A DNA stretch of 64,000 nucleotides from Octopus sinensis (GCF_006345805.1 NC_042998.1:196602001-196666000), one strand, 5' to 3'; shown: positions 6,429 through 59,260, counted from the stretch's first letter. A program made the numbers and translations. Notes: a model not told the origin generated them from the letters alone.

Positions 6429-6678
6429 ACGTGGCATGTAAAAAGCACCATCCGATCGTGGCCGTTTGCCAGCCTCATCTGGCACCTATGCCGGTGGCAC
6501 GTGAAAAGCACCCACTACATTCACGGAGTGGTTGGCGTTAGGAAGGGCATCCAGCTGTAGAAACACTGCCAGATCTGACTGGCCTGGTGCAGCCTTCTGG
6601 CTTCCCAGACCCCAGTTGAACCGTCCAACCCATGCTAGCATGGAAAGCAGACGTTAAATGATGATGATGATGATGATG
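6429..6678 (+). mobile_element. Most abundant short retro-element family (RTE-associated SINE-like), representative copy
   Basis: Internal repeats gtgccggtggcacgtaaaaagcac, then gttaggaagggcatccagctgtagaaac and a (GAT)n tail. Roughly 30 copies on both strands, e.g. 512-850, 14105-14615, 15440-15735, 30940-31500, 45360-45650, 52455-52930, 59615-59940, 62105-62600. Confidence 0.85.
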
Positions 6679-7747
6679 TCACTGCCTGGTATCAAACTCG
6701 GAATATTGGAGTTAGTAGCCTGCACTTTTAACCACTACACTGAGGGGTACATCAGCTGAAATGTTGTGTTAACAACAACCAAGATGAGGACAAATATCTG
6801 TCAAATGTAAACAATGTAAAATAATATATATACAATGGGCTTCTTTCAGTTTCCATCCACCAAATCTACTCACAAGGCTTTAGTGGGCCTAAGGCTATTG
6901 TAGGAGACACTTGTCCAAGGTGCCACACAGTAGGACTGAACCCGGAACCATGTGTTTGAGAAGCATGCTCCTTACCACACAGCCCTACATGTGCCTATAA
7001 TTGTGGACAGTATTTGGAAAGATTAAAATTTGAAAATTAAATATAAAAGTAATTAACAAACAAATGAACTCAGCAGAGAAATTTAACCACCATCACCACC
7101 ACTGCTGGCCCCACCACGACCAAAATTGTTTGAATCATCATCATCAGCATTTAATGTCTGTTTTTCATGCTAGCACGGGTTGGGCGGTTTGACCAGAGTC
7201 TGGGAAGCCAGGAGGCTGCACCAGGCTCCAGTCTGATCAGGCAGTGTTTCTACAGCTGGATGCCCTTCTTAACGCCAACCACTCTGTGAGTGTAGTGGGT
7301 GCTTTTTACATGCCAGGGGAGGCTGGCAGCGGCCACGATCGGTTGGTGCTTTTTACGTGCCACCGGCACAGAAGCCAGTCAGGGCAGCGCTGGCATCGGC
7401 TACGTTCGGATGGTGCATTTTATGTGCCACCGGCACAGGTATCACAACTACAATTTTCACTTGACGTTGATGTTGATGAATAAGTTTGTATTTTGTGGGG
7501 GGAATGAAAAAATTGGCATTTTGAGGACTGTCCCTTTAGTCTGAGAGAGAGGGAGAGAGAGAGAGGGAGGGAGTGAGTACAATAATCTCAGATTGAAAAG
7601 TCATCCCTAAAATATCAGACCCCTCTCCTGGTTACATCAAACAAACTTTTCTAAGTTCGTGACCATGTTGAAACGTCCTCATTATCTTCAGCTACCATAA
7701 TGGTCTCTGCATAAACACTAACTTTGAAATAAAGTTTACTCACTTAC

Positions 7748-17270: not shown

Positions 17271-17302
<32 letters not shown>

Positions 17303-17333
17303 TAATGTAATACAATGATGAAGAACAATTTAC

Positions 17334-19522: not shown

Positions 19523-20540
19523 CTGCAATAAAAAAGGATTCCATTCTTAAAAAAATACTGGCTCTCAACGATTCATATCCAGACATTCAAGACCCATCAC
19601 ATTCATAGGAATCATGGAAAAAATGGGATTAAAGCAATGTTTCTGGACACAGGTTTGGTTGTGTGGTGGACAAATTTACTTTGCTATCATGGAGTTCAAG
19701 TTCAATCCCATTGTAGGACATCTCCAGGAAATGTCTTTTACAAAATTATTTGGGAGCGTAAGGAGACATAAATACTCATTACTTTCAAGAAAAAACTGCC
19801 TTATTTAGTGAGGTAGGGAGTAAACAATGTTCTTCTAAAAACCAACCCCAATAGAAAGGCATCCATTTTGTAGACAGACGACAAAAGGAGGAGAATGTTG
19901 AAGTAATGAATTTAAATGTTGAATCATTCTTGCTGTCATCGTCCTAATCAACATTGGTTTAGATGATGATGATGATGATAAAATGATTAGAGCAAAAATG
20001 ATTTAACATTTAACCCTTTAGCATTTAAACCGGCCAAAAGTATTCTGCTTGTTTTATGTTCAAACTGGCCAGATCTGGTCTCTCACACCAACCCTACAAT
20101 ATTGTTTAAAAAATTAACAGCTACCTCATCAAAATCTCATAGCTACAAGATAATGCATGATTAGTTCAAAACTATTTGGATAAAGAAGCATTAATTTTGG
20201 CAGAATAATGCGAACACTAAAGGGTTAAATTCATTGCTTCAAAAAGAGGAGAATGTTGAGTGTGGCTGTTGCCAGTACCGCCTGACTGGCCTCGTGCCAG
20301 TGGCACGTAAAAGCACCCACTACACTCTCAGAGTAGTTGGCATTAGGAAGGGCATCCAGCTGTAGAAACTCTGCTAGATCAGATTGGAGCCTGGTGCAGC
20401 CATCTGGTTCGCCAGCCCTCAGTGAAACCGTCCAACCCATGCCAGCATGGAAAGCAGACATTAAACGATGATGATAATGATGATGACACACACATGCATT
20501 TATATAAATGAAAGGCAATTATCAATATATATCTTATTAC

Positions 20541-20590
20541 CTTGAAGATGGGTCAATCTTTTAACTGTTGTTTCATTTTTCCCCTTTCTT
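20541..20590 (-). pseudogene. Orphan 3' half of an extra exon-B copy, abutting a LINE 3' end
   Basis: Encodes ...KGKNETTVKRLTHLQ G|gtaataag. The donor-side intron resembles that of U3-B (gtaataagcatattgattgataactg). The 5' half and native acceptor are absent, and a TAG lies upstream in this frame. Confidence 0.7.
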
Positions 20591-20591
20591 T

Positions 20592-21125
20592 CCTTTTCTA
20601 GTTTCAGCTAAAGAGCTGTGGCCCCGCTGTTTGCTTTGCTATACTTTCATTAAACCTCCTCTGATATATGGCATTTGGTGAATGAGGGAGTTTGATGCTG
20701 CTGCCCTCATCCGTGTTTCTTGCTGCAAGGTAGGTCCATCTGAAACTCTTGACAAAAGGAGATCCAGTTTTGTTGCAAAGATGCCTACATCTACCCCATG
20801 TAGGTCCCTCAGGCTTTGTGGAAGGATACCGAAGAGCTATAGGCCCTTGAAGCCCAAACTGTCGCAGTACCTGGTCCTGTATCCCGATGGCAATGCTAGA
20901 ATCTTTGGTACCATGCAGTGGTGCCTCGTTCTACTGTTTGTGCAACTGACACTGCCAAAGTTTGGTACAAGTTCCAGGATTTTTCTAGATGTATATTACT
21001 GCGTATCTTTCCTGCCTTTGTTTTAGGGAGTAGAGTCGTAACTTTTCAGTCTCTCCCGGTAGCTGACATGTAGCACTGAGACAATCTTCTTCATGTAGCT
21101 TTGCTCGATTGCTTGGAGTTCATGG
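20592..21125 (-). mobile_element. Non-RTE LINE 3' fragment
   Basis: Minus-strand YRERLK...SLKQRQERYAVIYI...LVPNFG...LGFKG-like post-RT sequence ending in the tail ggccacagctctttagctgaaactagaaaag. A related fragment lies at about 32095-32310 (+). Confidence 0.65.
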
Positions 21126-22584: not shown

Positions 22585-22597
22585 TATATATATATAT

Positions 22598-22644
<47 letters not shown>

Positions 22645-22753
22645 ATATATTGTATTTATGTGTATATATATATATATATATGTATTTATGTGTATATATA
22701 TATATATATATATAATATATGTATTTATGTGTATATATATATATATATGTATT

Positions 22754-22800
<47 letters not shown>

Positions 22801-22803
22801 ATT

Positions 22804-22842
<39 letters not shown>

Positions 22843-22936
22843 TTATGTGTATATATATATATATATATATAATATATATATGTATTTATGTGTATATATA
22901 TATATATATGTATGTGTATATATATATATGTATGTG

Positions 22937-22972
<36 letters not shown>

Positions 22973-22974
22973 TG

Positions 22975-23005
<31 letters not shown>

Positions 23006-23130
23006 TATATATATATATGTGATGATGATGATGATGATGATGATGATGTGTATATATATGTATGTGTATATATATATATATATTATATATATATATATGC
23101 ATGTGTGTATATATATATATATATATATAA
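22585..23130. repeat. Compound (TA)n/(TG)n/(GAT)n microsatellite
   Basis: Directly visible low-complexity tract; the source of several spurious long ORFs. Confidence 0.95.
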
Positions 23131-25562: not shown

Positions 25563-25632
25563 CTTGTACTTGATTTTCGAGAGAAGCGTCCAAAGGTATT
25601 TCAATGCTAGAACTACCTGAAAGACTAGACAT
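25563..25632 (-). CDS. Module U3 exon A (70 nt, phase 0-1), begins with ATG
   Basis: Acceptor ttgttttcttcgatacag|ATG, donor CAAG|gtaaatcattct. Encodes MSSLSGSSSIEIPLDASLENQVQ; both ends resemble U2-A, with an internal deletion. Confidence 0.75.
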
Positions 25633-26772: not shown

Positions 26773-29700
26773 GCTTGAAGGATCAGGTAAAATATACCCT
26801 TATAAACGCAAAAAAAGTGGCCCATCCATAAAGGTATTTTACCTGATTACATAGCTATTCTTCTGCAATCAAGATTTTCTTCATTTCTAAGATGCCAACT
26901 CACTCAGTGCTTCAGGGTTTGTTCATAAAGATGTTCTAACAATCGAAAAAATATAAATACCTATTCATTGAGTTGCATTTATCAACTGTCCTAATACACA
27001 CACACACACACAAGGCATACCTACACATACCTGCGACTTTGTTTCCTCATAACTTTTAGAAAAATAGATATTTTTTAAAATGAAATCTTCTACAGATACC
27101 TCTCAGATGGTGTAGATTACTATAATATCGGAATTTAATGTGAAAAATACGTATGTGTACGTTGGGCACGTCTACATACATACTGAGTTACACAAATTTT
27201 TCGAAACTTCAGTTTCATTTTCTAGATACACGTGATGTGTATCAGTTATGTATTTTTACGCGCCCAACAAACTTTTTTCTATTCATATTGAATTCCGATA
27301 TAACTGTAATCTTCACCAACTAGAATATATTTAAAGAAAATTTCAGGAAAAAAAAAAGAAAACAAATTTCAGGAAGTTGAGAAAACAAAGAAACGTGGGA
27401 ATTTTCTGAAATTCTTCTCTCCACTCTCGAAAAAAATTTTTTTTTTCTCACAACAATTTCTGATATAACTGAAACAGGTATTCTTTCGGTTTGACTCGAC
27501 GATACGTTTTTGTGAAAATTCATTTTAAAATATCCATTTTTCTGAAAGTTATGAAGAAATAAAGTCGGAGACACATTAGTGGAGATATGCCTCTATATAA
27601 TATGTATTTCTTTACTACCCACAAGGGGCTAAACACAGAGGGGACAAACAAGGACAGACAAAGGGATTAAGTCGATTACATCGACCCCAGTGCGTAACTG
27701 GTACTTAATTTATCGACCCCGAAAGGATGAAAGGCAAAGTCGACCTCGGCCTATGCCTCTATATAATATGAGCTGAGAAAGGATTGAAAAATCGCTTTGG
27801 CCCCTGTTTGGCTGTGGATTTGTAATCCTTTTATATTGACATCACGCGAAAATGCTCCCACTACCCTTTATAAAGTGGTTGCAAAAACCAAATGACACGG
27901 AACAAGCACCAGTCTGCGACAGTAGTGGATGCTAATGGGAAATGATTGAAATTATGATGACCCGTCCAACCCATGCCAGCGTGGAAGACGCACATGAAAT
28001 GACGACGATCTCTGTTTACATACACAAGAAGGAACATAGGAACTCAGTGCTTCAAAGTTGTTAGTAAGAAAGTTTTTAAATTGCAACTGATTTTTCAGAG
28101 AGAGAAAAAAAGAAGAAAACGGCGGGAGAATTGAGGAAAAACAGAATATAAAATAATAATACGCCATAAGAAGGAGCAGATAAGGAAGATGGATGTAGTA
28201 AATGTTTCTATTGTGAATGTTGGGAATAATTTCATGATTGGAGACGATGTTTCCAAGGAGATTTCAAACCGAGCAAAGAATATAATAACAATACTTACAA
28301 TTAAGGTAGAATAAGGTAATTACTTATAAACTTTGTGTCTGGAATATAGGAATATGTTCATAGCGTCAAAATGTCGTATATTTGTCATTTCAATGAGAAA
28401 TTTAGTCCACATTTAGTCTAAATATGTTTTGCCAACGGAGGATATTAACAACATAACAACTTCACTGAAACTTATTTATTTACGCCTGTTGCTAAGTCGA
28501 TTACCTCCCCTCTCTTTCTTCGCTTCTCACATTTACCTCCCCTGATTATTAGCATCATTTTTGGCGCCATTTCGTTTCTAGGCCCCCAACTACAGGGAAA
28601 GACGTATTTTTCTTTGTCAAAAATATGTATTTTCCAGGTCCAAAACGGAAATTCTTCTCGTACATGGAAAGTCACAGTTTAATGAAATTTTTAAAACTTC
28701 AAACGATAAACTAATCAAACACCTTTAAATAACTGTTCCAATGGGTTTTCATTCATTTCAACGGTGTCAATAGCACCAATTTGAATTGAATCTCTCTAAT
28801 TATAAAGCTGAAGTTGTCTGTGTGTGGCAGGTTAGGTAGCCTTCAACTAACACTATCTTCTCCGAGACCCTGCAGCACAAGTTGACCAAAATTGAGAGCA
28901 TGATAGAAGGAGGTTTGCTCTTCCTTTCGTAGAAGAAAAAATTCAAATCAGACCATGTTAACACCAAAAATTACTTACATCAAAAAGGTGCTTTTTTTTC
29001 TATGAAAATCCCTATTTTTTACGATGTTTTGACTGCTGTGTCGTCATCTTTCGGTGTATTTCAACCAGAGTTTGATGACTTGAATAAAAATTCCCAAGAT
29101 AAATGTGTCTGTTAGAATAATTCCGTTGTTTACTTTCCACACTGAATGTCCATGAAAAGAATAAAAAATATGGAATTGGATGTGTCTTGGTGACAAAACA
29201 CATCACCTGCAGAACTGACGTCACAGGAACTAATTTAAATGAACGAACACTAATGAAAATGGGTCGTTTCTCGATTATGTCTGTTATATCCTTCCATACT
29301 TAAGGTTGCTGTTTGTATTACACAATAGGTTATGTGTTGCACGACAGTGAACATGGATTTTAAGCGGGAAAGGGAAGGCTTCTTTTGTGCGGTTTAATTA
29401 ATGAAATAAATATACAGTTATTTAAAATACGATAGGCATACAATACCTCAATATCATCATATTTGTTTTTTTCCATTCTAAACTGACTTGAACGATGTTT
29501 TAGGTACAGAGGCCCTCTCTGTTGGCAATTCCTTTAGTCGCCCCTTGCAATACGTAGATATATGGTGTGCCTGTTGAAAAACTCGGACCCGTTTGGCTTG
29601 GTATATAGGCTTTCAGGAAAATAAACGATGTTATACGAATATAAATACAAAAATACAATAATAATAATAACCGGACATAACAACAGGCTTCATTTCCACA

Positions 29701-31653
29701 CACGCCAGCTGAATTCAAATCGTCCCCAGTCGAAAGACGCCTGTTGTTATGCCCTGTTATTATTATTTTTATTGTATTTTTGTATTTATATTCGTGTAAC
29801 ATTGTCTGTTTTTCCATCCTTGTTTTCGTACACATTCGATGCTTTTTTCCAAGGAATCTAATGCTCTTAGTTTAGTTTTTTCCTTGGGGCTGGCCAGATT
29901 GGAGCAATCTCAAGATTAATCAGCCGAAATTGCGAGGATGATCCGGTTCTTGACTGAGGATAAAAGGCTTCGAATGACCTGTCCTTGTTTTTTAGTATCG
30001 TCTATCTGGATGTTTTGTTGTCCCTTTTTGTATCACCTAGCTGTCCAGATGTTTTGCGTTCTTGTCCCATTTTGTATTTTATATATATATCATCATATAT
30101 ATATATATATATATAGTGGTGTACATACACTTTGTTCTCATATATATATGTATATGTTTGTGTGTCTGTGTTTGTCCCCCACAACATCACCTGACAACCG
30201 ATGCTGGTGTGTTTACATCCCCATAACTTAGCGGTTTGGCAAAAGAGACCGATAGAATAAGTACTAGGGTTACAAAGAATAAGTCCTGGGGTCGATTTGC
30301 TCGACTAAAGGCAATGCTCCAGCATGGCCACAATCAAATGACTGAAACAAATAAAAGAATATTAAACATAACTTGCCCAGGAACTCTTTGATACCACCTC
30401 ATACATGGAAGGTACACGCGTCCATGGAATACTCAACCACTTGCACGTTAATTTCATGAGCAGGCTGGTTCCTTGATCAACTGAAACCCTCACCATTGTA
30501 ACCAAGGGAATGCCAGTTTTGTTTTTAATCATCAGGTGTGGCTGTGTGGTTAGGAGTTCATTTCCCTGATGTCGTCCGCTATAGTCTCGGGTTGATCAAA
30601 GTGGATTTGGTAGATGAAAACTGAAAGAAGCCTCTGTGTGGGTGTCTTTGAGTCTATGTTTGTCCCCACCCGACCACTTGACAACCGGTGTTGGTGGGTT
30701 TACAGCCCCATAACTTAGAGGTTCAGCAAAAGGAACTGATAAAAAAAATACTAGGCTTAAAAAGATCATGTACTGCGGTTGATCCACTTCGTCTAACAGT
30801 TCTAGTGACTGAAGCAAGCAACAGATAAAAGGGTAAAAGACCATTTAGGGTGTCAAACAGGATGGCAACAGAAATATAGCTGGAGTTATTGTTCCTCGGC
30901 TGTGATATAAAATATATTTTAAGAACGAATCGAAATCGAACCTCATCCAACGACTGGCACCCATGCCAACCTCCCTTCATTGGACACTAAACTCTGCTTG
31001 TGAAGACCTGTTGGGGCAAGTGAAATTGAAATTGAACCAAATCCTATGACTGGCACCCGGCCGTTGCCAGTGCCACTGGACTGGCTCTTGTGCAGGTGGC
31101 AAGTAAAGAAACACTGTTTCGACCCTGTGCTTGAGATGACCTATTGAGTCAAGTACATCAACATCAAAAATCAATGGAAATTGTAGTTGTGATACCTGTG
31201 CCGGTTGCATGTAAAAAACACCATCCAAACGTGGCCGATGCCAGTGCCACCTTGACTGGCTTCTGTGCTGGTGGCACGTATAAAGCACCAACCGATCATG
31301 GCCATTGCCAGTCTCGCCTGGCACCTATGCTGGTGGCACATAAAAAGCATCCACTACACTCATGAAGTGGTTGGCGTCCAACTATAGAAACTCTGCCAGA
31401 TCAAGATTGGAGCCTGGCGCAGCCATCTGGTTCACCAGTCCTCAGTCAAAATCATCCAACCCATGCTAGAATGGAAAGCGGACGTTAAATGATGATGATG
31501 ATTTTAAGAAGGAATTGAAATGAAGGTGTTTGGTGTTCAATTCCCTGTGTTTCTAACGCTGCAATTATCAAAATAATTGAGATTTCTTTTTCATGTTATA
31601 AAGAATTTACAAATCAAAAGTAAAAATACGTATTTATTAATTGCTGATATTAC

Positions 31654-31815
31654 TTTCCAGAAGCACCAGTCTTTCAGCTGTTCTTTCCTTCCTTGCGTTC
31701 TTTCATAAACGTTCTTTGAAAGCATCGAGTTCTTCATTATCAATCAAAGCTTGCCTATGTTTGGTTTTAGCATGTTTTAAATCTTCGACAAAGTTTTTGA
31801 GAAGATCTTCAAATT
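31654..31815 (-). CDS. Module U4 exon B (162 nt, phase 1-1) with an in-frame TGA at 31703-31705 (pseudo-exon or poison exon)
   Basis: Acceptor gctcatgtctgtccag|AA, donor GAAA|gtaata. Encodes (E)FEDLLKNFVEDLKHAKTKHRQALIDNEELDAFKERL*KNARKERTAERLVLLE; the frame continues past the stop and aligns to the other B exons. Confidence 0.7.
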
Positions 31816-32913
31816 CTGGACAGACATGAGCAAAAAAACATTTGAAGCTAATTATGATGATTAAAAGAAACATCATTAGACATTTACACGTATAATATTT
31901 CGACTGCAATGGACATAAGGTGGATGGATGGATGGATGGACAGATGTTTATATATTTATATGATACAGATCATACACAAATCACAATTTGTATCAAGTAT
32001 TTGTGTTATACCCTTATAAATTAAGGGTCAGTTTAAACGGACGATTGGCATGAATGGGTTAAGCAAGAACCAGAGGTCAATAACAAGTAAGAGAGATGGT
32101 ATGGAAAGCAGTGACTATTGGGGTCGACTAAAAATCTCAATCTCTACTCTTTCCAATGCCGCCAGGAGTGCTACAAAATTTGTGTGATGTGGAAATATTC
32201 CATCAATATTGCTCAAATGATATTGGCATCAGTTTTAAAATCCATCCAAGACTTGGCCCCATGCTATCTGCCCACTTCAAAAAGTTACAAACACCCACTT
32301 GATATATCGATAAATAAAACCACTAGAGTTGTTTTGTAACTCTTTTACCTGTTTCAGTCATTTGACTGTGACCATGCTGGAGCACCACATTTAGTCAAGC
32401 AAATCGACCCCAGGACTCATTCTTTGTAAGCCCAGTACTTATTCTATCGGTCTCTTTTGCTGAACTGCTAAGTTACAGGGACGCAAACACACCAGCATCG
32501 GTTGTCAAACAATGTTGTGGGGACAAACACAGACACACAAACATATATACACACACACATACATACATATATATATACGATGGGCTTCTTTCAGTTTCCG
32601 TCTACCAAATACACTCACAAGGCTTTGGTCAGCCCGAGGCTATAGTAGAAGACACTTGCCCAAGGTGCCACGCAGTGGGACTGAACCCGGAACCATGTGG
32701 TTGGTAAACAAGCTACTTACCACACAACCACTCCTGTGCCTAAAGTCAGAGTAAATTCATGATTATTTTAGAATTTAAGTGAAATATTGGTATTTTAGTT
32801 TGAAATATAGTAAAGATTACATTAAAACATCTTTCAACCAAATGAACTTTCTCTTTTGGTTTTATCATTACTAAGCTAAAACAACAATGGGTTTGTCGCA
32901 TCCTTAGTACTGA

Positions 32914-33397
32914 CATGCATAAGATCTGGTCATCAAATCTAAGTAGAGACTTCAAACTTGAAATCTTCAAAGCCACAGTCGAACCAATTCTACTATATGG
33001 CTCAGAAACCTGGACGTTATCAAAGAAGTTTGAGAGGCGGTTGGATGGAACCTACATTTGCCTCCTTATAAGAGCTCAAAATCTCTCGTGGAAGCGCCAT
33101 CCAACCAAAGTACAAATATATGGGAAACTACCACCTGTATCATCTCTTGTGAAAGGTAGAAGTGTCCAGTTTGCTGGACATTGTTGTAGAGCTGAAAACG
33201 AGGTAATTTCTACTCTTCTCCTCTGGAAGTCATCTACTCGCAATGCCAGAGGGCGCACACTCTCCTACCCTGATGTAATCTCCAGGGATACAGGCATCCA
33301 GCAACAGGACCTCCATAATGCTATGATGGACTGTGAGGTCTGGCGTAGCATGGTAAATTCCATTGTCTCGACCACAGTCGAACAATGATGATAATGA
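32914..33397 (+). mobile_element. 5'-truncated RTE/RTEX-type LINE with 9-bp TSD
   Basis: ORF 32915..33388 (VEPILLYGSETWTL...QFAGHC) is a typical post-RT LINE C-terminus with a (TGA)n tail. TSD tagtactga at 32905-32913 and 33398-33406. Confidence 0.85.
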
Positions 33398-33427
33398 TAG
33401 TACTGAATCAGTTAAAATATATAGGTG

Positions 33428-34036
33428 TGTAACGAACTTAGCGAGTGTGAATATCTTGTCTTGTACTTTCGGGGTACAAGAAAGCAATCACTCACTAGCC
33501 GTTGCTTTAATAATCCAGAAATCTACTAGTCAGAAACAACAAGACGCAGACATAAAATATATATATTCTACTTTATTCTCTTTCTTGGTAACAGTAACAA
33601 TAAGTGTGTTATCTGATGTCCTTGGTTCTGGGCGCACAAGGCTGAAAGTTAATCGATTGTAATATTTACAATATTCAGCCGCCAAAACCAGAACGGGTTC
33701 AAGATGGCGTCGAACAATGGAGACGATGTTGGTCTGCAACAATTTGGTTAAAGGCCTTTGGTAAGGACTGCTAGAAGCAAGTTCAAACGGAGAGAAAATA
33801 TGCGTGACCGTCGCGTTCAATCGCTGCCGTCCCAAGTCGCCGCTGCTGCTGCTAGCGGTCAAACGTTCCACGACCCCCCCTGCCTCGCTAACTATCACGT
33901 AGGCAAAAGGGTCGTGCTTCCAGTGGTTCGCGCATGCGCGAAAGGGCCCTTCCTTTCTCTGCCTTGGTAAAGGCACCAACACGCGCGAAATACAAATGGA
34001 CGGTGCGCGAGCGCGCACCGCTATAGGGTCACTACA
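33428..34036 (-). mobile_element. Solo LTR (Ty3/Gypsy-type by TSD length), 609 bp
   Basis: TG...CA termini (tgtaacgaac ... ggtcactaca) with a 4-bp TSD GGTG (33424-33427, 34037-34040). The empty site is visible in the paralogous intron at about 40943-40950. CpG-rich; AATAAA on the minus strand at 33572-33577 gives the orientation. Confidence 0.85.
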
Positions 34037-34099
34037 GGTGGCTATTAAAGAAAACGTAGACAGTATATTAATGTAACACAATGTAAAAGTATGGCTTAC

Positions 34100-34151
34100 C
34101 AAGCACATTTTCTGAAAGAATGCTTTTATGGGGTGACACAGCAGGAAACTC
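34100..34151 (-). CDS. Module U4 exon A (52 nt, phase 0-1)
   Basis: Strong acceptor ctttttctgtcttctttgcttcag|GAG, donor TTG|gtaagc. Encodes EFPAVSPHKSILSENVL; the downstream intron start is homologous to those of U5-A and U6-A. Confidence 0.72.
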
Positions 34152-36215
34152 CTGAAGCAAAGAAGACAGAAAAAGAAAAAATACATTTGAGAGGAGAAAC
34201 TGCATCTCAAAGATTGGCCTTCGTTACCCTAACAAAGCTTAGACATGACCCAAATTGTAGTACAGTTTCCACATCTGGAATGGTGCTGCAGTTACGAACA
34301 CCAAGACATCTTACACTATATCCAAAAATGACCATATGGCTGAGTGGTGTGAGGTAAATCACCAAGGACTACAGATCTACTGCATCTCTCACTGTCTTTC
34401 GCAATTATAACTACAAATTATCATCATTACCACTGCCTCCACTGACATTTCTTCATAATAATGTTTACTAATCAATTTCTACTGTTAGAATTGGTGACCC
34501 ACGACTTCAACTAAAAACTTTATCATTACAAATATTCTAATAAAAACTCTGCTGTTACAAATGTAATGTGACAGGAATTGAACCCCTGAATCACTCAACT
34601 ATTTTGTTTTGTAACTGTTGAAAACTGGAACCAATTATGAAAAGTCAAGTATCATATTGATCTTGAATGGATTAATGGCTAAGTCAACCTAAGCAGAGTG
34701 TAAAGATTAAGGTGCAAAACCAAATAATATAGAGTTACCCTTTTTGTTACTATATTTGTATGAAAATACACCAACTTTGATTTAATTACTTTAAAAGAAA
34801 ACGAAGAATTTAGAAAATAACTGTCATTGTTATTAAGCTGGTGTAAGGTGGCAAGATGGCCAAATCGTTAGCACACCAGGTAGGAGGAATTACAACTGTG
34901 TTTCATGGTCTGCTACCACAACAGCTCCTTTATAGGGTCCAGTTAGCTCAAGACATCATCAGGAGGAACCACGTCCGGTTTTGGCCCCTACTCTTCTACC
35001 ATTTTGATGTGGTGGGGCCCCTCCTTTCAGAGCTGTCTTCAGTCCTGGTGTTGGGTGCATGTCTTCTTTCTTCTGTTCCCTTAACATCATTTGGTCTGTC
35101 TTTACATTCTGAGTTCAAATTCTACCAGGGTCAACTTTGCCTTTAATCTATTTCAGGGTCAATAATATAAGTACCAGTTAGGCACTGGGGTCTGTGTAAT
35201 TGACTTAGTCCCTCTCCCATAACATTGCTGAACTTGGGCCAATATAGGAAACCATAATTAAAATGTCGTTTGGAACGTAAATTAATGTGAAACCTTGATA
35301 GAAAGTTTTAGTTACGATCTCTTTAAAACAGTGAATATATTTCATAGAACCAGGGGATCTCTCAAACAGGTTGATATCAAAAGGGTTAAGCTTCAAACCA
35401 CAGCCCACATGCCCCTACTGTTTGAGATAAATAAGTGTACTGTTTGAGATAAATAAATATTTATTTCTTTATTGCCCACAAGGGGACAAACAAAGGGATT
35501 AAGTCAATTACATCAACCCCAGTGTGTAACTGGTACTTTATTTATCTACCCCGATAAGGCGACAAGCTGGCAGAAACGTTAGCAAACCGGTCGAAATGCT
35601 TTGTGGTATTTCGTCCGCTGCTGCATTCTGAGTTCAAATTCCACCGAGGTCGACTTTACCTCTCATCCTTTTGGGGTCGATAAATTAAGCACCAGTGACG
35701 CACTGGGGTCGATGTAATCGACTTAATCTGTTTATTTGTACTTGTTTGTCTCCTCTATGTTTAGCCCCTTGTGGGCAATAAAGAAATAGGTACTTAATTT
35801 ATCAACCCCGAAAGGATGAAAAGCTAAGTTGACCTCAGCGGAATTTGAACTCCGAACGTAACGGCAGACGAAATACCTATTTCTTTACTACCCACAAGGA
35901 GTTAAACACAGAGAGAACAAACAAGGACAGACAAACAGATTAAGTTGATTACATCGACCCCAGTGCATAACTGGTACTTATTTAATCGACCCCAAAAGGA
36001 TGAAAGTCAAAGTCGACCTTGGCGGAATTTGAACTCAGAACGTAATGGCAAATGAAATACCGCTAAGCATTTTGCCCGGCGTGCTAACGTTTCTGCCAGA
36101 TCACCGCCTTAATAAATATATATTGATTGATAATTGCATCAGAGTGATTTGGTTTCTCGCTTTCTTCAAAAGAGAGCTCCAGTAAATATTTAAAGTAAAG
36201 AAGGTAGTATATTAC

Positions 36216-40624: not shown

Positions 40625-40964
40625 CTGAAAAGACATCAAAGAAACATTAATTTAGATATGAGGCCACATTTGTCTATCTGAGACCTTGTTCCTTGTACAT
40701 GTGTAGAACAGGGCTCTGCAACCGGTATGCCATAGCATGTATTCCACAGCACACTGGTGTGCCATGAGATGATGCTAGGTGTGCTGCAGTGTAACCTGAA
40801 TATAATTTTCTTCCTTGTACTTTTAGTTGTAATTTTAAAACATCTTTCAACCAAATGAACTTTCTCTTTTGTTTTTATCATTACTAAGCTAAAACAACAA
40901 TGGGTTTGTCCCATCCTTAGTACTGAATCAGTTAAAATATATAAGTGGTTATCAAAGTAAACGT

Positions 40965-41544
40965 TACTACTATGGTACTCCGTCGGTTACGACGATGAGG
41001 GTTCCAGATGATCCGATCAATGGAACAACCTGCTTGTGACATGTGTACCCTTAATGGAGTTCTCGGGGAGATTCAGCATGACACAGAGTGTGACAAGACT
41101 GGCCCCTTTGAAATACAGGTACAACAGAAACAAGAAGAAAGAGTGAGAGTAAGCTGTGGTGAAAGAGTACAGCAGGGTTCACCCCACCCCTGTCAGAGCC
41201 TTGTTGTTGTTGTTGTTGTTGTTGTTAAGCAACAAGATAGGTAAGGGTGATTAGGTGATGGTCTAGGGCTTAGGGGTAGGAGACGCCAGACCTTGGGAAA
41301 AAAAATACTTTGGTCATCTTGTAGTCGAGAGCTCTTCGTTGACGCCTGACACCACTGGGAGGTGAACCTCAAAGTCACTGGAAATGGAGATCTTCAGGTC
41401 CAAATTCTTGAACGGCGCCAGAGCCTCATGGAGTTTTAGGTGTTTTTGCTCAATAAACACTCACAATGCTCAGTCTGGGAATTGAAACCGCGATCCTATG
41501 ACTGTGAATTTGCTGCTCTAACCACTGAGCCATTGCACCTCCAC
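40965..41544 (-). mobile_element. tRNA-headed SINE with a nested LINE-tail fragment
   Basis: Minus-strand head gtggaggtgcaatggctcagtggttagagc, short (tac)n tail. TSD aaagtaaa(c/t)gt at 40954-40964 and 41545-41555. Confidence 0.7.
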
Positions 41545-41597
41545 AAAGTAAATGTAGACGGTATATTAATGTAACATAAAGTAAATTTATGGTTTAC

Positions 41598-41775
41598 CTT
41601 GTATTTCAAGTTGAGTAGAAATGCTCAATCGGTTATCAGGAGCTGGCAAGTCTATAGTATGAAGCTGTTGAGAAAGTTCCAAAGAAGGTTCCGAAGGAGG
41701 CGCTCGGGAAGTTCTCACAGGATGTGCTCGAGAAGTTCTCACAGGTGGAGGTCTGAGACAACATAATAAACGATA
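41598..41775 (-). CDS. Module U5 exon A (178 nt, phase 0-1)
   Basis: Acceptor ttttccttcgtttatttcag|TAT, donor ATACAAG|gtaaacc. Encodes YRLLCCLRPPPVRTSRAHPVRTSRAPP...NRLSISTQLEIQ. Confidence 0.72.
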
Positions 41776-47281: not shown

Positions 47282-47971
47282 CTGGAATATATAAACAATA
47301 CATACCTTATAGATATGATTATAACGACATTTTAAAGCATTTATACTGAAACAGACATGGTGTCCTCCAAAAATGTATGCACACTTTAGAGGAATGCCAA
47401 TGAGAAATGTTCCAGAAGACTATGGATGTTGATGAGCTCCACAAAGGCACAGGAGTAGAGCAGGAGTGGCTGTGTGGTAAGTAGCTTGCTTACCAACCAC
47501 ATGGTTCGAGGTTCAGTCCCACTGCATGGCATCTTGGGCAAGTGTCTTCTACTATAGCCTCGGGCTGACCAAAGCCTTGTGAGTGGATTTGATAGATGGA
47601 AACTGAAAGAAGCCCGTCGAATATATGCATCATCATCATCGTTTAGCGTCTGCTTTCCATGCTAGCATGGGTTGGACGGTTCGACCGGGGTCTGGAAAGC
47701 CAGGAGGCTGCACCAGGCCCAGTCTGATCTGGCAATGTTTCTACGGCTGGATGCCCTTCCTAACGCCAACCACTCCATGAGTGTAGTGAGTGCTTTTTAC
47801 GTGTCACCGGCACAGGTGCCAGACGAGGCTGGCAAATGGCCATGATCGGATGGTGCTTTTTACGTGCCACCAGTATGGAGGCCAGGCGAGGCTGGCAACG
47901 GCCACGATCGGATGCTGCTTTTTACGTGCCACTGGCATGGAGGCAGTCGGGGTGGCGCTAGGAAGTCGGGG

Positions 47972-48646: not shown

Positions 48647-50130
48647 GTATGATCCTTGTAAAACAGGTTTGATCCATTATGATCCTTCAGTGGGTGATTC
48701 TCTGCAGGTTTTTGCTTTAACATCAATTACTTTGACACTCAAATCAGAGATCAATTGAGAAGTTTCCAGAAATTCCCAGTGCAAGGCCTGATTTAGTTCA
48801 GATAGTAGGGTAAGACAGAGATCAGCAGCTGAAAGGATCAATTATGTAGTTGAATCATTTCTCAGCATTCCAGAGTCCAGAATTTTAATGCATATGTTTT
48901 TGGCTTGCCATTGTCAGGGAGTTAGAGGTGCATTAAATAAAAACCTGATGTTTATTGCAATCAACCCATTGTATCAAAGCAAAAAAGAAAAAAATGAGTT
49001 ATTGGCTTTCATACAAAAGATGGCTGATGTGATCATCAAGGCATCACTCAGTCTTAGAAAAGAGACCTGTTTTTATGGTATATTTCATCCACACATGAAG
49101 CCGTGACAATTTTGTTCCATCTAACCAGCCCACCTATGTGTACCTTTCCTTCATTGGACACTAAACTCTGCTTGCGAAGACCTGTTGAGGCAAAGAGGAA
49201 TTCCCATGGGAAACCTGTCTTAAATTTCTCTGTTATTGTCTGGAAGACTGTTACCAAAACCCTTATAAACTCTCACCAGCATACTAAATTAATAGCTGTA
49301 CTTATTGTTAACTAGCATCTGTGCTAGTGGAGTGCTAAGAACACCATCCAAGTGTGATCATTGCCAGAGCAGCTGACTGGCTTCCATGCCGGTGGCACGT
49401 AAAAATCACCATTCAAGCATGATTATTACCAGTGTCACCTTACTGGTACTTGTGCTGGTGGCACGAGAAAAAACGTTCGAGCGAGGTTGTTGCCAGTGCC
49501 GCTAACTGGCTCCTGTGCAGGTGGCCGTTGCCAGTACCACCTGACTGGCCCTCGTGTTGGTGGCATGTAAAAGCACCCATTACACTCTCGGAGTCGTTGG
49601 CATTAGGAAGGGCATCCTGCTGTAGAAACTCTGCCAGATCAGGATTGGAGCCTGGTGCAGCCATCTGATTCGCCAGTCCTCAGTCAAATCATCCAACTCA
49701 TGCTAGCATGGAAAGCGGATGTTAAATGATGGTGATGATGATGATAACCATCCATATAATTGAAACAAAGGAGAACCAATGTCTTAGTATAAAATATGTG
49801 TGCATGTGTCCATGTGTGTTTGTATGTGAGTGTGTGTGCATGCATATGTGTGTGAGTGTGTGCATGTGTGTGTGAGTGTGTGCGTGTGTGCATGAGTGTG
49901 TGTGTGTGTGTGTGCGTGTGTGCACATGTGTGTGTGAGTGTGTGCATGTGTTCATGTATATAGATGTATATGTACAAAAGTGTGTAATTGTTTGTGTGAT
50001 CATTATGGAATCAAAAGAACGATGGGTTTATCCTATCGTTAGTCAATGAATGAAATAAAATAGAAAGATGTCTACCAAAGTAAATGTAGACAGTACAATA
50101 ATGAAAATATAATGGAAAAGAATGGTTTAC

Positions 50131-50200
50131 CTTCTATCTTAACTGTGGGAGTAGCACCATGCAAATCGTCGTCTTCGAAATCAGCATAATCATAAGGGGA
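50131..50200 (-). CDS. Module U6 exon A (70 nt, phase 0-1)
   Basis: Acceptor tttttctgcttcctttgctccag|TCC, donor ATAGAAG|gtaaaccattct (as in U1-A). Encodes SPYDYADFEDDDLHGATPTVKIE. Confidence 0.75.
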
Positions 50201-57049: not shown

Positions 57050-57810
57050 TCACATAATCTTACCAGTGTAGTCTTCTCTCTTGCACACATCTGATGCTTT
57101 TATGCCCAATTTTTCTCTCAAGACGCTTACACTGTTGTACATGCGCACATTGCATATCCACTGAAGCATACCAGCTTCATTTCTTTCAAGCTTATGCATG
57201 TTTTCTGCAGTCACAGTCCACGTTTCATTGCCATGCAGCATAGCTGTTCGTACACAGGCATCATACAATCTGCCTTTCACTCTAAGGGAGAGGACCTCTG
57301 TTACCAACAAAGGTAGAAGCTCTCTGAACTTTGCCCAGCTTATTCTTGCAGCTACACTCTTGGAGCATTCCCCTCCACTGCTGACTTGCTCACTTAGGTA
57401 ATCGAAGCTATTAACTACTTCTAAGTATCCTCCCAGACAATTGAGGAACTCTATTTTCCTGTGTTTATTGTACCTCTACATCTTCCATACACGAAGACTA
57501 TTTTATCCGTTAACCTTCCTCTGATATTGCTGCACCCCTTATTCATCTATAGCTTGCACTGGGTACACCTTATCGAGTTTCTACCTACAGCTTTTCTACA
57601 TACTGAGCAGGGTCATCACCCCAAAGGGATTTGGAATTTGTCCGCTTTCCTACTTACTAAGACTTTGGTCTTTGCTAAACTAACTCTAAGACCTTTTGAT
57701 ACCAGACCTTGCTTCTGCACCTGAAATTTCTTCACTGGTTCTGGTAGTGATTTAGCTACGAGAACAAGATCGTCAGCACTGAGGAGCTCCCAGGGGTAGC
57801 CTGACTGAAA
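57050..57810 (-). mobile_element. Decayed RTE LINE fragment
   Basis: WELLSADDLVL and RTAMLHGNETWTV motifs in minus-strand ORFs. Confidence 0.85.
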
Positions 57811-58799
57811 TGACATTTGTACATTACTGCATATGCTTTATACGCACTTTTGACAAGTTGTGGTGCACCTGAGCACTGTATACAATAATTTCATTATTAT
57901 TATTATTTTAAATACATGTGTGAATGAGTGCAGTGTGTGTGTGTGTGTGTGTTTCCTTGTTTTGACATCAAGTGATAGTTGTAAATGATAAATGAGTATA
58001 TGAGTGTCATACAAGTATTGTTTTTCGTTTCCAATGTTCTGCAAAAACATGTCTGGCCATGGGGGAATATTACCTTGCCTAGAAATAGTGAGTGTGGGTG
58101 ACAGCATGGTCATCAAACAGTAGAAAATCTCTCTTAATAAACTTAATGTTATGTCATGTAAGCAGGGAAAAGCAGACATTCTTTTCTACTCTAGGTATAA
58201 GGCCTGAAATTTTGGGGGAGGAGGGGGCAGTCGATTGACCCCTGTACACAACTGGTACTTAATTCATCGACCCTGAAAGGATGAAAGGCAAAGTCGACCT
58301 CGGTGGAATTTGAACTCAGAACGTAGCAGCAGACTAAATACCTATTTCTTTATTACCCACAAGGGGCTAAACATAGATGGGACAAACGGATTAAGTCGAT
58401 TACATCGACCCCAGTGCATAACTGGTACTTAATTTATCGACCCTGAAAGGATGAAAGGCAAAGTCAACCTCAGCGGAATTTGAACTCAGAATGTAATGGC
58501 AGATGAAATACCGCTAAGCATTTCACCCGGCATGCTAACGATTCTGCTAGCTTGCCACCTTTAAAATTAGGGATAAGCACATATTAAAACAATGATGATG
58601 ATATGTAGACACACATGAACAGAAGCCTCGTAAACATCCTCTGATGGTTAAATGCTGTTTGTCTTTCATCACGATTGAAGCTTGTAATGTTCAGTAGGAT
58701 ATGTGAGAGGTAAAATATTAGGATGTCCAATTGCATGAAATAAAGTCAGAGGGGGACGGGATAAACTACCTGTATCAACTTGCTATAAAAACAGGTGGT

Positions 58800-59260
58800 A
58801 ATTTTACTTTGTGCTTATTCTTAGTGCAAGTTTTGAAGAGTGTAATTCGATTTTAACAGTTATTTTTTCAAAGCTATAACGGAAGTGACAAAGGAGCATA
58901 TTTTGCTTTATGAGTTCAATAAAGGCAACAATGCAATGGAAAGTGAGAGGAATATTAATGCAGTATATGGGGATCGAACAATAAGTGTAAGCCAGTGTCA
59001 ACAGTGGTTCCAGAAATTTAGAGCTGGAAACTACAGCCTAGAAGACAAGCCTCATTCTGGAAGATCTGTAGAGCTCAATGAGGAAGTCCTGCAAACCCTG
59101 GTGGAACAAGATCCCATCATAACTGTTGAGGAACTAGCGGAGAAGCTTGGATTTAGTCATTCAACCATTCATTGACACCTGTGTGCCATTGGAAAAGTCA
59201 GCAAATTGGGTCAATAGAATCCTCACAAACTTTCTGAGTCTAATTGCAAGACAAGGCTCC
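58800..59260 (+). mobile_element. Mariner transposase 5' remnant (HTH region)
   Basis: ORF 58885..59175 LLYEFNKG...WFQKFRAGNYSLEDKPHSGR...TVEELAEKLG is a mariner N-terminal DNA-binding region, interrupted by stops. Confidence 0.85.

What the first reader, a model, noticed from the sequence alone, without database searches (positions are those of the whole stretch)
33428..34036. Sense-oriented solo LTR that could split the array into two transcription units
Seen: the LTR lies 64 nt downstream of the U4-A donor, in gene orientation. It carries AATAAA (33572-33577), a consensus donor CTA|GTGAGT (33495-33490), and the most conspicuous CpG-rich stretch in the window, with YY1-like AAGATGGCG (33701), NRF1-like GCGCATGCGC (33930) and a 9-bp hairpin (34001-34020). 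The next exon (U4-B) has a stop, and the next A exon (U3-A) begins with ATG. Known: solo LTRs can act as alternative promoters and as premature polyadenylation sites. Inference: an upstream transcript (U6-U5-U4A, repeats only) may end in the LTR. An LTR-driven transcript could then splice to U4-B/C as 5' UTR and start translation at U3-A, giving 567 or more codons, which would explain why U4-B decayed.
Basis: partly seen in the sequence, partly recalled or inferred. Interest (0 to 1): 0.75.

Follow-up and report, generated by a model that had tools for sequence, protein, structure and literature searches.

The report
Intronic solo LTR beside octopus Cep57L1
The 609-base element is a real solo retrotransposon LTR in the last intron of an octopus gene just upstream of Cep57L1, but the two genes are separated further downstream, so the LTR is most likely an ordinary intronic passenger.

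Summary
Window 33428-34036 is a solo LTR with TG...CA ends and a 4-bp target-site duplication. Its insertion point is defined exactly by an empty site in the paralogous intron of the neighbouring repeat unit. All listed motifs are at the stated coordinates, and it is the most CpG-dense stretch of the window.

The window is Octopus DNA. The same LTR sits at the same site in O. vulgaris (600/609 identical).

The "array" is two genes. The upstream gene is a diverged duplicate of Cep57L1's N-terminal units. Its 311-aa O. vulgaris isoform splices U4-A to U4-B across the LTR and ends at the same U4-B stop, which is followed by its own AATAAA. Cep57L1 has its own 5' exon at 28.5 kb. That exon is conserved in O. 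bimaculoides, where no LTR lies within 10 kb upstream.

Most LTR differences between the two species are CpG decay, at the same relative excess as the flanks. The CpG richness therefore reflects transposon origin and youth, not a protected promoter island.

A 284-aa O. vulgaris isoform reads through the U4-A donor, and the only canonical poly(A) hexamers before U4-B lie in the LTR.

Ordinary; low interest.

The parts
33428..34036 (-). Solo LTR, 609 bp, with TGTA...TACA ends. Orientation is inferred as the gene's sense strand.
   Evidence: paralogous empty site; orthologous copy in O. vulgaris, 600/609 identical; order of signals.
34037..34040 (.). Target-site duplication, copy 1 (GGTG on plus, CACC on the gene strand).
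33424..33427 (.). Target-site duplication, copy 2.
33644..34036 (-). Putative U3, the CpG-dense part. It contains the 16-bp palindrome TTCGCGCATGCGCGAA (33927-33942), the inverted repeat with 9-bp arms (34001-34020), and AAGATGGCG on the opposite strand (33701-33709).
   Evidence: The U3 boundary is inferred from motifs only.
33641..33668 (-). TATA-like TAAATA (33668->33663), with an Inr-like TCAGC 25 nt downstream (A at 33643). This is a putative LTR transcription start.
   Evidence: Motif only, inferred.
33531..33577 (-). AATAAA (33577->33572) followed by a GU-rich stretch TGTCTGCGTCTTGTTGTTTCTG (33552->33531). This is the putative R/U5 poly(A) site.
   Evidence: Unchanged in O. vulgaris except one CpG->TpG at 33552.
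33506..33511 (-). Second poly(A) hexamer, ATTAAA, in the putative U5.
33490..33495 (-). Donor-like GTGAGT (CTA|GTGAGT) in the putative U5.
   Evidence: No annotated model uses it.
34100..34151 (-). Exon U4-A of the upstream gene (EFPAVSPHKSILSENVL), with donor G|GTAAGC.
34047..34099 (-). Start of the intron. It is conserved among the paralogous units (85% with 41545-41598, 78% with 50069-50131). In the 284-aa O. vulgaris isoform it is read as GKPYFYIVLH, with the stop codon at 34070-34068.
32912..33397 (+). 5'-truncated RTE-like LINE 3' fragment, antisense to the gene, 30 nt from the LTR. It has its own target-site duplication (TC)AGTACTA and is absent from the U5 paralogue.
   Evidence: (weak DUF6451 match, E 0.0035).
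31703..31815 (-). Exon U4-B: 37 codons (the first codon is completed by the last base of U4-A), then TGA at 31705-31703. This is the stop of the O. vulgaris 311-aa isoform.
31633..31638 (-). AATAAA 65 nt after the U4-B stop, followed by a T-rich stretch and conserved in O. vulgaris. It is the likely normal 3' end of the upstream gene.
28505..28558 (-). First annotated exon of Cep57L1 (MMLIIRGGKCEKRRKRGE|gtaatc, as in the O. vulgaris model). The surrounding ~570 nt (28217-28786) is 86% identical to O. bimaculoides.
25564..25632 (-). Exon U3-A (MSSLSGSSSIEIPLDASLENQVQ), the start codon of Cep57L1 isoform X2 in O. bimaculoides.
40929..40953 (-). Paralogous empty site in the U5 intron (GATAACCACT|TATATATTTTAACTG).

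Best explanation
The element is a solo LTR left by an LTR retrotransposon. The family was not identified. A 4-bp duplication fits Ty3-like elements, the commonest LTR class reported in O. vulgaris, but other superfamilies also make 4-bp duplications.

The retrotransposon inserted into the last intron of an octopus gene immediately upstream of Cep57L1, and LTR-LTR recombination later removed its interior. It entered after the U5/U4 units duplicated and before O. vulgaris and the window's species split.

The host gene's 3' half is a diverged tandem copy of Cep57L1's N-terminal A-B units. Its main isoform removes the LTR with the intron (U4-A 34100 spliced to U4-B 31815), stops at the TGA in U4-B, and probably ends at the AATAAA at 31638. 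Cep57L1 then starts from its own conserved 5' exon near 28.5 kb.

The LTR therefore does not create the two transcription units. Its CpG density is what an octopus transposon brings with it. The CpGs are now decaying as expected inside a methylated gene body. At most, its sense-strand poly(A) signal ends a minor intron-retaining isoform.

Shown: the insertion, its boundaries, its presence in O. vulgaris, the exon map, and the CpG-biased substitutions.
Inferred: the orientation, the lack of promoter activity, and the methylation state.
For: Insertion: TG...CA ends, the CACC duplication and the paralogous empty site.

Orthologue: O. vulgaris L001 43387-43995 is 98.5% identical, at the same 64-nt distance from the U4-A donor.

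Gene map:
- The O. vulgaris proteins CAI9716917 (311 aa) and CAI9716918 (284 aa) and O. bimaculoides Cep57L1 X1-X3 map exon by exon onto the window.
- In L001 the 311-aa gene ends at the U4-B stop, and a separate Cep57_CLD gene starts 3 kb further on.
- The 311-aa protein aligns with the Cep57L1 N-terminus over two units (26% identity, E 2e-6).
- AATAAA lies after the U4-B stop.
- Cep57L1 exon 1 is conserved to O. bimaculoides.

CpG decay: 5 to 7 of the 9 LTR differences are CpG<->TpG/CpA. CpG positions change 7.4 times as often as other positions in the LTR (5.7% vs 0.77%, Fisher p 0.004), against about 7-fold in the non-repeat flank and about 10-fold in the LINE fragment.

Literature: octopus methylation is concentrated in gene bodies, and TEs are CpG-dense (PMC9476566). 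The O. vulgaris isoforms were added from Iso-Seq/RNA-seq by PASA (PMC10700109).
Against: No expression data could be examined, so a weak LTR promoter or terminator cannot be excluded.

On the gene's strand the LTR has a coherent TATA-like - Inr-like - AATAAA - GU-rich layout.

The 284-aa isoform shows that some transcripts do not splice at the U4-A donor.

No second copy of the LTR family was found, so neither the family assignment nor the orientation rests on homology.

The O. vulgaris models are labelled 'hypothetical predicted protein'.
Confidence: 0.75

Rival explanations
1. The LTR acts as an alternative, premature poly(A) site. A fraction of upstream-gene transcripts fail to splice at the U4-A donor, run 64 nt into the LTR, and are cleaved after AATAAA (33577-33572). 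This would give the 284-aa isoform that ends GKPYFYIVLH. This reading adds to the best explanation rather than excluding it.
For: The O. vulgaris isoform CAI9716918 reads through the U4-A donor to a stop at 34070. Alternative isoforms in that annotation were added from transcript assemblies. On the gene strand, between the U4-A donor and the U4-B acceptor, the only AATAAA/ATTAAA hexamers are the two inside the LTR. The AATAAA is followed by a GU-rich stretch.
Against: The 3' end of that isoform is not known here. Intron-retention models often come from unspliced pre-mRNA. Hexamers of this kind occur about once per 1.3 kb by chance. The main isoform splices across the LTR.
Confidence: 0.35
2. 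The LTR is an alternative promoter whose transcript splices from 33496 to U4-B (31815) as 5' UTR and goes on to translate Cep57L1 from the U3-A ATG. The LTR insertion freed U4-B to decay.
For: The sense-strand TATA-like/Inr-like pair and a GTGAGT donor lie downstream of it. The U3 is CpG-dense, with NRF1-like and YY1-like motifs. U4-B sequence after the stop still resembles the other B exons in frame and keeps a donor, so it was once an internal exon.
Against: Cep57L1 has its own conserved first exon 3 kb downstream of U4-B, in three species. O. bimaculoides shows no LTR within 10 kb upstream.

U4-B is the annotated terminal coding exon of the upstream gene and has its own AATAAA.

A transcript starting at about 33643 would meet the LTR's own AATAAA 66 nt later.

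The CpGs decay at the gene-body rate, so this is not a protected island.

The YY1-like motif is on the other strand.
Confidence: 0.05
3. It is not an LTR but another kind of sequence, such as a host CpG-island promoter, a coding fragment or a different transposon class.
For: No other copy was found in 163 kb of octopus DNA or in the collection scans. A 168-codon open frame runs through it on the gene strand, and only about 0.1% of dinucleotide shuffles reach that length.
Against: There is an exact 4-bp duplication, TG...CA ends and a clean empty site. The open frame has no relative in 5.8 billion or 1.84 billion proteins and no Pfam match. It shows 6 amino-acid changes for 9 base changes against O. 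vulgaris, so there is no purifying selection.
Confidence: 0.03

Closest known systems
Solo LTRs of Ty3-like (gypsy) retrotransposons in introns
   Same: Length of a few hundred bp, TG...CA ends with a short terminal inverted repeat, a 4-bp target-site duplication, no internal region, and removal with the intron by splicing. Ty3-like elements are the main LTR class reported in O. vulgaris (PMC13282606).
   Different: The family could not be identified. No full-length relative, primer-binding site or polypurine tract was available, so the superfamily assignment is a guess from the duplication length and the literature.
LTR-derived alternative promoters (my own knowledge: the mouse MT-C LTR driving the oocyte Dicer isoform; the THE1B LTR driving CSF1R)
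   Same: A sense-oriented intronic or upstream LTR with a TATA-like element and a downstream donor that could in principle splice into host exons.
   Different: No transcript evidence exists here, and the downstream gene has its own conserved first exon. The LTR's own poly(A) signal lies between the putative start and the donor. The CpGs show gene-body-type decay.
Transposon-borne premature polyadenylation sites in introns (my own knowledge: IAP and other ERV LTR insertions in mouse genes; HERV-H LTR poly(A) sites in human genes)
   Same: A sense-strand AATAAA plus a GU-rich element inside an intronic LTR. An annotated isoform fails to splice the host intron.
   Different: The 3' end of that isoform was not seen. 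The dominant annotated isoform splices normally.
Vertebrate-type CpG-island promoter
   Same: About 400 bp with CpG o/e of 1.15-1.27 and GC of 49-54%, with NRF1-like and YY1-like motifs.
   Different: The CpGs are not protected; they mutate about 7 times faster than other sites, as in the flanking intron. Octopus TEs are CpG-dense in general (PMC9476566).

Membership tests
Solo LTR of an LTR retrotransposon | TG...CA termini with a short terminal inverted repeat | tested here: met
   5' TGTAGTGA... and ...TCGTTACA 3' on the gene strand, matching at 6 of 8 positions as an inverted repeat.
Solo LTR of an LTR retrotransposon | Target-site duplication of 4-6 bp directly flanking the element | tested here: met
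   CACC on both sides (34040-34037 and 33427-33424). The same is seen in O. vulgaris.
Solo LTR of an LTR retrotransposon | Empty site in a related sequence | tested here: met
   The paralogous U5 intron (40929-40953) reads straight through ...AACCACT|TATATATTTTAACTG. An orthologous empty site could not be examined, because the O. bimaculoides region is not alignable or not covered.
Solo LTR of an LTR retrotransposon | Internal order U3-R-U5 (promoter, start, poly(A) signal) | tested here: inconclusive
   On the minus strand, counting from the LTR's 5' end: TAAATA at 369, TCAGC at 392, AATAAA at 460, GU-rich at 485-506. The plus strand has no AATAAA or ATTAAA. This is motif evidence only.
Solo LTR of an LTR retrotransposon | Homologous copies elsewhere, in pairs flanking gag-pol with a primer-binding site and polypurine tract | not testable with these tools
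   No octopus genome collection was available. No copy was found in the window, L001 or L002, and the metagenome and viral scans were empty.
LTR-derived alternative promoter | Transcripts that start in the LTR and splice into host exons | not testable with these tools
   No expression data were available. None of the O. vulgaris or O. bimaculoides models retrieved uses 33496->31815.
LTR-derived alternative promoter | The downstream gene depends on the LTR for a 5' exon | tested here: not met
   Cep57L1 exon 1 at 28558-28505 is conserved in O. vulgaris and O. bimaculoides.
Transposon-borne intronic poly(A) site | Sense-strand hexamer with a downstream GU-rich element | tested here: met
   AATAAA at 33577-33572 and a GU-rich stretch at 33552-33531. 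These and the ATTAAA are the only such hexamers in this intron.
Transposon-borne intronic poly(A) site | An mRNA isoform that ends there | tested here: inconclusive
   The 284-aa O. vulgaris isoform reads through the U4-A donor, but its 3' end is unknown.
CpG-island promoter | CpGs protected from methylation-driven decay | tested here: not met
   In the LTR, CpG positions differ at 5.7% against 0.77% for other positions. The flank shows the same excess (17% vs 2.5%).

The most novel reading that the evidence does not exclude
The LTR is bifunctional and conserved in at least two Octopus species. Its poly(A) signal would end a short isoform of the upstream Cep57L1-derived gene. Its promoter would launch an alternative Cep57L1 transcript that uses U4-B as a non-coding exon. 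A single retrotransposon remnant would then mark the functional boundary inside a tandemly duplicated gene.
Probability: 0.04. Interest if true: 0.45.

Novelty: new member of a known kind. Interest (0 to 1): 0.17.

Why it matters
As found, it matters little. It is one more intronic solo LTR in a genome that is about two-thirds repeats.

It is useful mainly as a worked example. In octopus, a CpG-rich patch with promoter-like motifs inside a gene can simply be a recent transposon, because octopus transposons start CpG-dense and only decay once they sit in a methylated gene body.

The more interesting biology around it is the gene itself: a partial tandem duplication of Cep57L1's N-terminal repeat units that has become a separate upstream gene with its own stop and poly(A) signal.

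If the LTR's poly(A) site is used, it would be a modest case of a transposon shaping an isoform of a young gene.

Tried and rejected
1. Other copies of the LTR. None was found in the window, in O. vulgaris L001 apart from the orthologue, or in O. bimaculoides L002. Exact-match scans of metagenome and viral contigs with the two LTR ends found nothing. The family and its orientation could therefore not be fixed by homology.

2. The 168-codon open frame in the LTR as a gene. It is longer than 99.9% of shuffles. It has no relatives and no Pfam match, and it shows 6 amino-acid changes per 9 substitutions against O. vulgaris. Rejected as coding.

3. Low divergence of the LTR (1.5% against a 4.2% locus mean) as a sign of constraint. 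Rejected, because 16% of 609-nt windows in the locus are as similar or more similar, and divergence is very patchy.

4. Dating the LTR against the U4-B stop using O. bimaculoides. The 10 kb upstream of its Cep57L1 contains N gaps. It has neither U4-A/U4-B nor alignable unique sequence beyond the exon-1 region. This was inconclusive.

5. Looking up the 284-aa protein's contig. It is not on record. The 311-aa isoform gave the locus instead.

6. Rfam scan of 31.0-36.5 kb: nothing in the LTR. A fold of the putative R region gave z = 0.1. ARAGORN found no tRNA in 30-42 kb.

7. Two early self-comparison scripts gave nothing usable. One was swamped by SINE and microsatellite noise, and the other timed out.

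Full report
**What is there.** Window 33428-34036 is a 609-bp block that reads TGTA...TACA on either strand. It is flanked by GGTG on both sides, at 33424-33427 and 34037-34040 (CACC on the minus, gene strand). It has no second copy in the window.

The neighbouring repeat unit gives an independent test of the boundaries. The intron after exon U5-A is 85-97% identical to the intron after U4-A over the unique stretches. I removed the 609 bp with one CACC, and the adjacent LINE fragment with one copy of its own duplication. The U4 intron then aligns colinearly with U5. U4 reads ...ACGTTTTCTTTAATAGCCACC|TATATATTTTAACTGATTCAGTACTA|AGGATG..., and U5 reads ...ACGTTTACTTTGATAACCACT|TATATATTTTAACTGATTCAGTACTA|AGGATG.... 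The block is therefore an insertion with a 4-bp target-site duplication and no internal region, which is a solo LTR.

- AAGATGGCG (33701-33709) is on the plus strand, antisense to the gene.
- GCGCATGCGC is the core of a perfect 16-bp palindrome (33927-33942).

The LTR holds the three most CpG-dense 300-nt windows of the 64 kb. Its CpG o/e is 1.18, against 0.47 for the whole window. The short motifs themselves are at chance frequency. For example, minus-strand AATAAA occurs 49 times in 64 kb.

**What the surroundings are.** A protein search with the translated exons hit only Octopus proteins. One was O. bimaculoides "centrosomal protein cep57l1" (Pfam Cep57_CLD and Cep57_MT_bd). The other was an O. 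vulgaris "hypothetical predicted protein". Cluster members supplied the isoforms. Mapping them back with tblastn gives the exon map on the minus strand.

The upstream gene (O. vulgaris CAI9716917, 311 aa) uses these exons:
- 50200-50132
- 47270-47229
- 45221-45135
- 43433-43389
- about 41766-41599 (U5-A)
- 40625-40467 (U5-B)
- 39589-39476
- 36281-36216
- 34151-34100 (U4-A)
- 31815-31706 (U4-B), ending at the TGA at 31705-31703

Its first exon lies outside the window.

Cep57L1 follows:
- exon 1 at 28558-28505
- U3-A at 25632-25564, starting with ATG as in O. bimaculoides isoform X2
- U3-B at 24068-23895
- U3-C at about 19523-19476
- U2-A at 17490-17335
- U2-B at 16684-16511, and onward

Residues 146-308 of the 311-aa protein align with residues 23-196 of Cep57L1 (26% identity, E 2e-6). 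The upstream gene's 3' half is therefore a diverged tandem copy of two N-terminal A-B units.

**The LTR in a second species.** The genomic locus of the 311-aa protein in O. vulgaris was retrieved as L001 (OX597815.1). It contains the same LTR at the same place: L001 43387-43995, 600/609 identical, with the same flanks and the same duplication. The window is therefore from a close relative of O. vulgaris. Locus-wide substitution divergence is 4.2% but very patchy. The insertion pre-dates the split of the two species.

In L001 the 311-aa gene ends at the U4-B stop, and a separate Cep57_CLD gene begins 3 kb further on. According to the genome paper, alternative isoforms in that annotation were added by PASA from Iso-Seq and RNA-seq assemblies (PMC10700109).

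**Why the LTR does not make the split.**
- The 311-aa isoform joins U4-A to U4-B, so the LTR is spliced out with its intron. U4-B supplies 37 codons and the stop. It is in use, not decayed leader sequence.
- Sixty-five nt after the stop there is an AATAAA (31638-31633) followed by a T-rich stretch, conserved in O. vulgaris. This is a natural 3' end for the upstream gene.
- Cep57L1's first exon and about 570 nt around it are 95.6% identical to O. vulgaris and 86% identical to O. bimaculoides. The O. bimaculoides locus (L002) shows no trace of the LTR in the 10 kb upstream. The coding reading of that exon differs between species (MGEARNTGE against MMLIIRGGKCEKRRKRGE), which suggests it is really 5' UTR and that translation starts at U3-A. 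Either way it is an old, LTR-independent 5' exon.

The U4-B sequence after the stop still aligns in frame with the other B exons (KNARKERTAERL against RSSRNETTAERW) and keeps a B-type donor. The stop is thus a secondary change in what was once an internal exon. It is shared with O. vulgaris, like the LTR, so the order of the two events is unresolved.

**CpG richness.** Between the window and O. vulgaris the LTR differs at 9 positions, all transitions. Five are plain CpG<->TpG/CpA differences, and two more are a TG/CA pair best read as independent decay of one CpG. CpG positions differ at 5.7% and other positions at 0.77% (Fisher p 0.004). In the flanking intron the figures are 17% and 2.5%.

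The relative excess is thus about 7-fold in the LTR, about 7-fold in the non-repeat flank and about 10-fold in the LINE fragment. This is the signature of germline methylation, not of a protected island.

Published methylomes of O. bimaculoides show methylation concentrated in introns and exons of broadly expressed genes. They also show that TEs are CpG-dense and largely unmethylated elsewhere (PMC9476566). An LTR that arrives CpG-rich and then decays inside a methylated gene body explains the observation without invoking a promoter.

The LTR's lower overall divergence (1.5%) is not an outlier for this patchy locus. Sixteen percent of windows of the same size are at least as similar.

**Orientation and possible activity.** On the gene strand the LTR shows, in order:
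- TAAATA (33668)
- TCAGC 25 nt later (A at 33643)
- AATAAA (33577)
- a GU-rich run (33552-33531)
- ATTAAA (33511)
- GTGAGT (33495)

The plus strand has no AATAAA or ATTAAA at all. This fits U3 (about 390 nt) - R (about 90 nt) - U5 (about 125 nt) in the gene's sense. It is motif evidence only, and I put the sense orientation at roughly 75-80%.

The 284-aa O. vulgaris isoform reads through the U4-A donor (GKPYFYIVLH, with the stop codon at 34070-34068). The only canonical poly(A) hexamers on the gene strand between that donor and U4-B are the two in the LTR. The LTR may therefore end a minor intron-retaining isoform. I give this about one chance in three.

The promoter part of the model has no support. 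A transcript starting at about 33643 would meet the LTR's own poly(A) signal 66 nt later, no model uses the 33496->31815 junction, and the downstream gene has its own promoter region.

**Comparison and verdict.** The element meets the structural tests for a solo LTR: the termini, the duplication and an empty site. The homology tests (other copies, primer-binding site and polypurine tract, gag-pol) could not be run with the collections on hand. It fails the one testable requirement of a CpG-island promoter and the dependence test for an LTR-derived promoter.

It is a new member of a known kind, an ordinary intronic solo LTR. The surrounding partial duplication of Cep57L1 into a separate upstream gene is the more interesting feature of the locus.

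Only a solo LTR was handled, never an element interior.

Noticed in passing
window 34047-34099, 41545-41598, 50069-50131, 17298-17317 (minus strand): The first ~55-63 nt of the intron after each A exon (GTAAGCCATACTTTTACATTGTGTTACATTAATATAC...) is 78-87% identical among units U4, U5 and U6. A 20-nt core also survives in U2. The A exons themselves are barely alignable. This could be a conserved intronic splicing element, or part of the short isoform's tail.
   Followed up: partly
window 32912-33397 (+ strand): A 5'-truncated LINE 3' end is inserted 30 nt from the LTR, antisense to the gene. It has an open frame ...LYGSETWTLSKKFERRLDGTY...FAGHCCRAENE...RGRTLSYPDVISRDTG... ending in an (ATGATA)n-like tail, and a target-site duplication (TC)AGTACTA. 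It gives a weak DUF6451 match (E 0.0035), is absent from the U5 paralogue, and is present in O. vulgaris.
   Followed up: partly
window 33530-34210 (minus strand): A stop-free frame of 226 codons, 168 of them inside the LTR, is reached by only about 0.1% of dinucleotide shuffles and stays open in O. vulgaris. It has no homologue in two very large protein searches, no Pfam match, and 6 amino-acid changes per 9 substitutions. It is probably not coding, but its length is unexplained.
   Followed up: yes
window 40966-41540 (minus strand): The U5 intron carries its own insertion at the point where U4 is uninterrupted. By eye it has a tRNA-like head (GGAGGTGCAATGGCTCAGTGGTTAGAGC...), followed by a (CAA)n run, and is flanked by a ~9-12-bp duplication (TTTACTTTG). 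ARAGORN calls no tRNA there.
   Followed up: partly
window 57250-58960 and 30050-30760 versus the rest: Divergence from O. vulgaris is strongly mosaic. Stretches of 0.7-1.7 kb are 0-0.3% different, while the locus mean is 4.2% and some blocks reach about 10%. This suggests shared haplotype blocks, introgression or gene conversion between very close Octopus lineages. The species of the window was not identified, and no protein of its own appeared in the database.
   Followed up: partly
window 28505-28563; L002 10001-10027: The upstream ATG of Cep57L1 exon 1 gives unrelated peptides in O. vulgaris and the window (MMLIIRGGKCEKRRKRGE) and in O. bimaculoides (MGEARNTGE), although the DNA is 86% identical. 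The exon is probably 5' UTR, with the true start at the U3-A ATG (25632). A GAAATGGCGCC motif lies just upstream.
   Followed up: partly
window 20539-20595 (minus); L002 17861-17911: An extra remnant of a B-type exon (KERKGKNETTVKRLTHLQG) lies between U3-B and U3-C in both the window and O. bimaculoides. No retrieved protein model uses it.
   Followed up: no
whole window, e.g. 508-1070, 6431-6680, 47628-47950, 62105-62460: About 47% of the window matches another part of the window. One SINE-like family of ~200-330 bp has more than 30 copies and carries 62-69-bp internal tandem sub-repeats (...TTTTTACGTGCCACCGGCACG...).
   Followed up: no
window 35554-36122: Two copies of another repeat lie in inverted orientation (35554-35793 and 35873-36113). 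They give a sub-threshold Rfam match to the plant family MIR2646 (95 bits against a gathering score of 245). This is almost certainly a repeat-derived hairpin, not a curated miRNA.
   Followed up: no
window 22585-23129: A 545-bp (TA)n microsatellite lies in the Cep57L1 intron after U3-B and produces the lowest GC of the window (26%).
   Followed up: no
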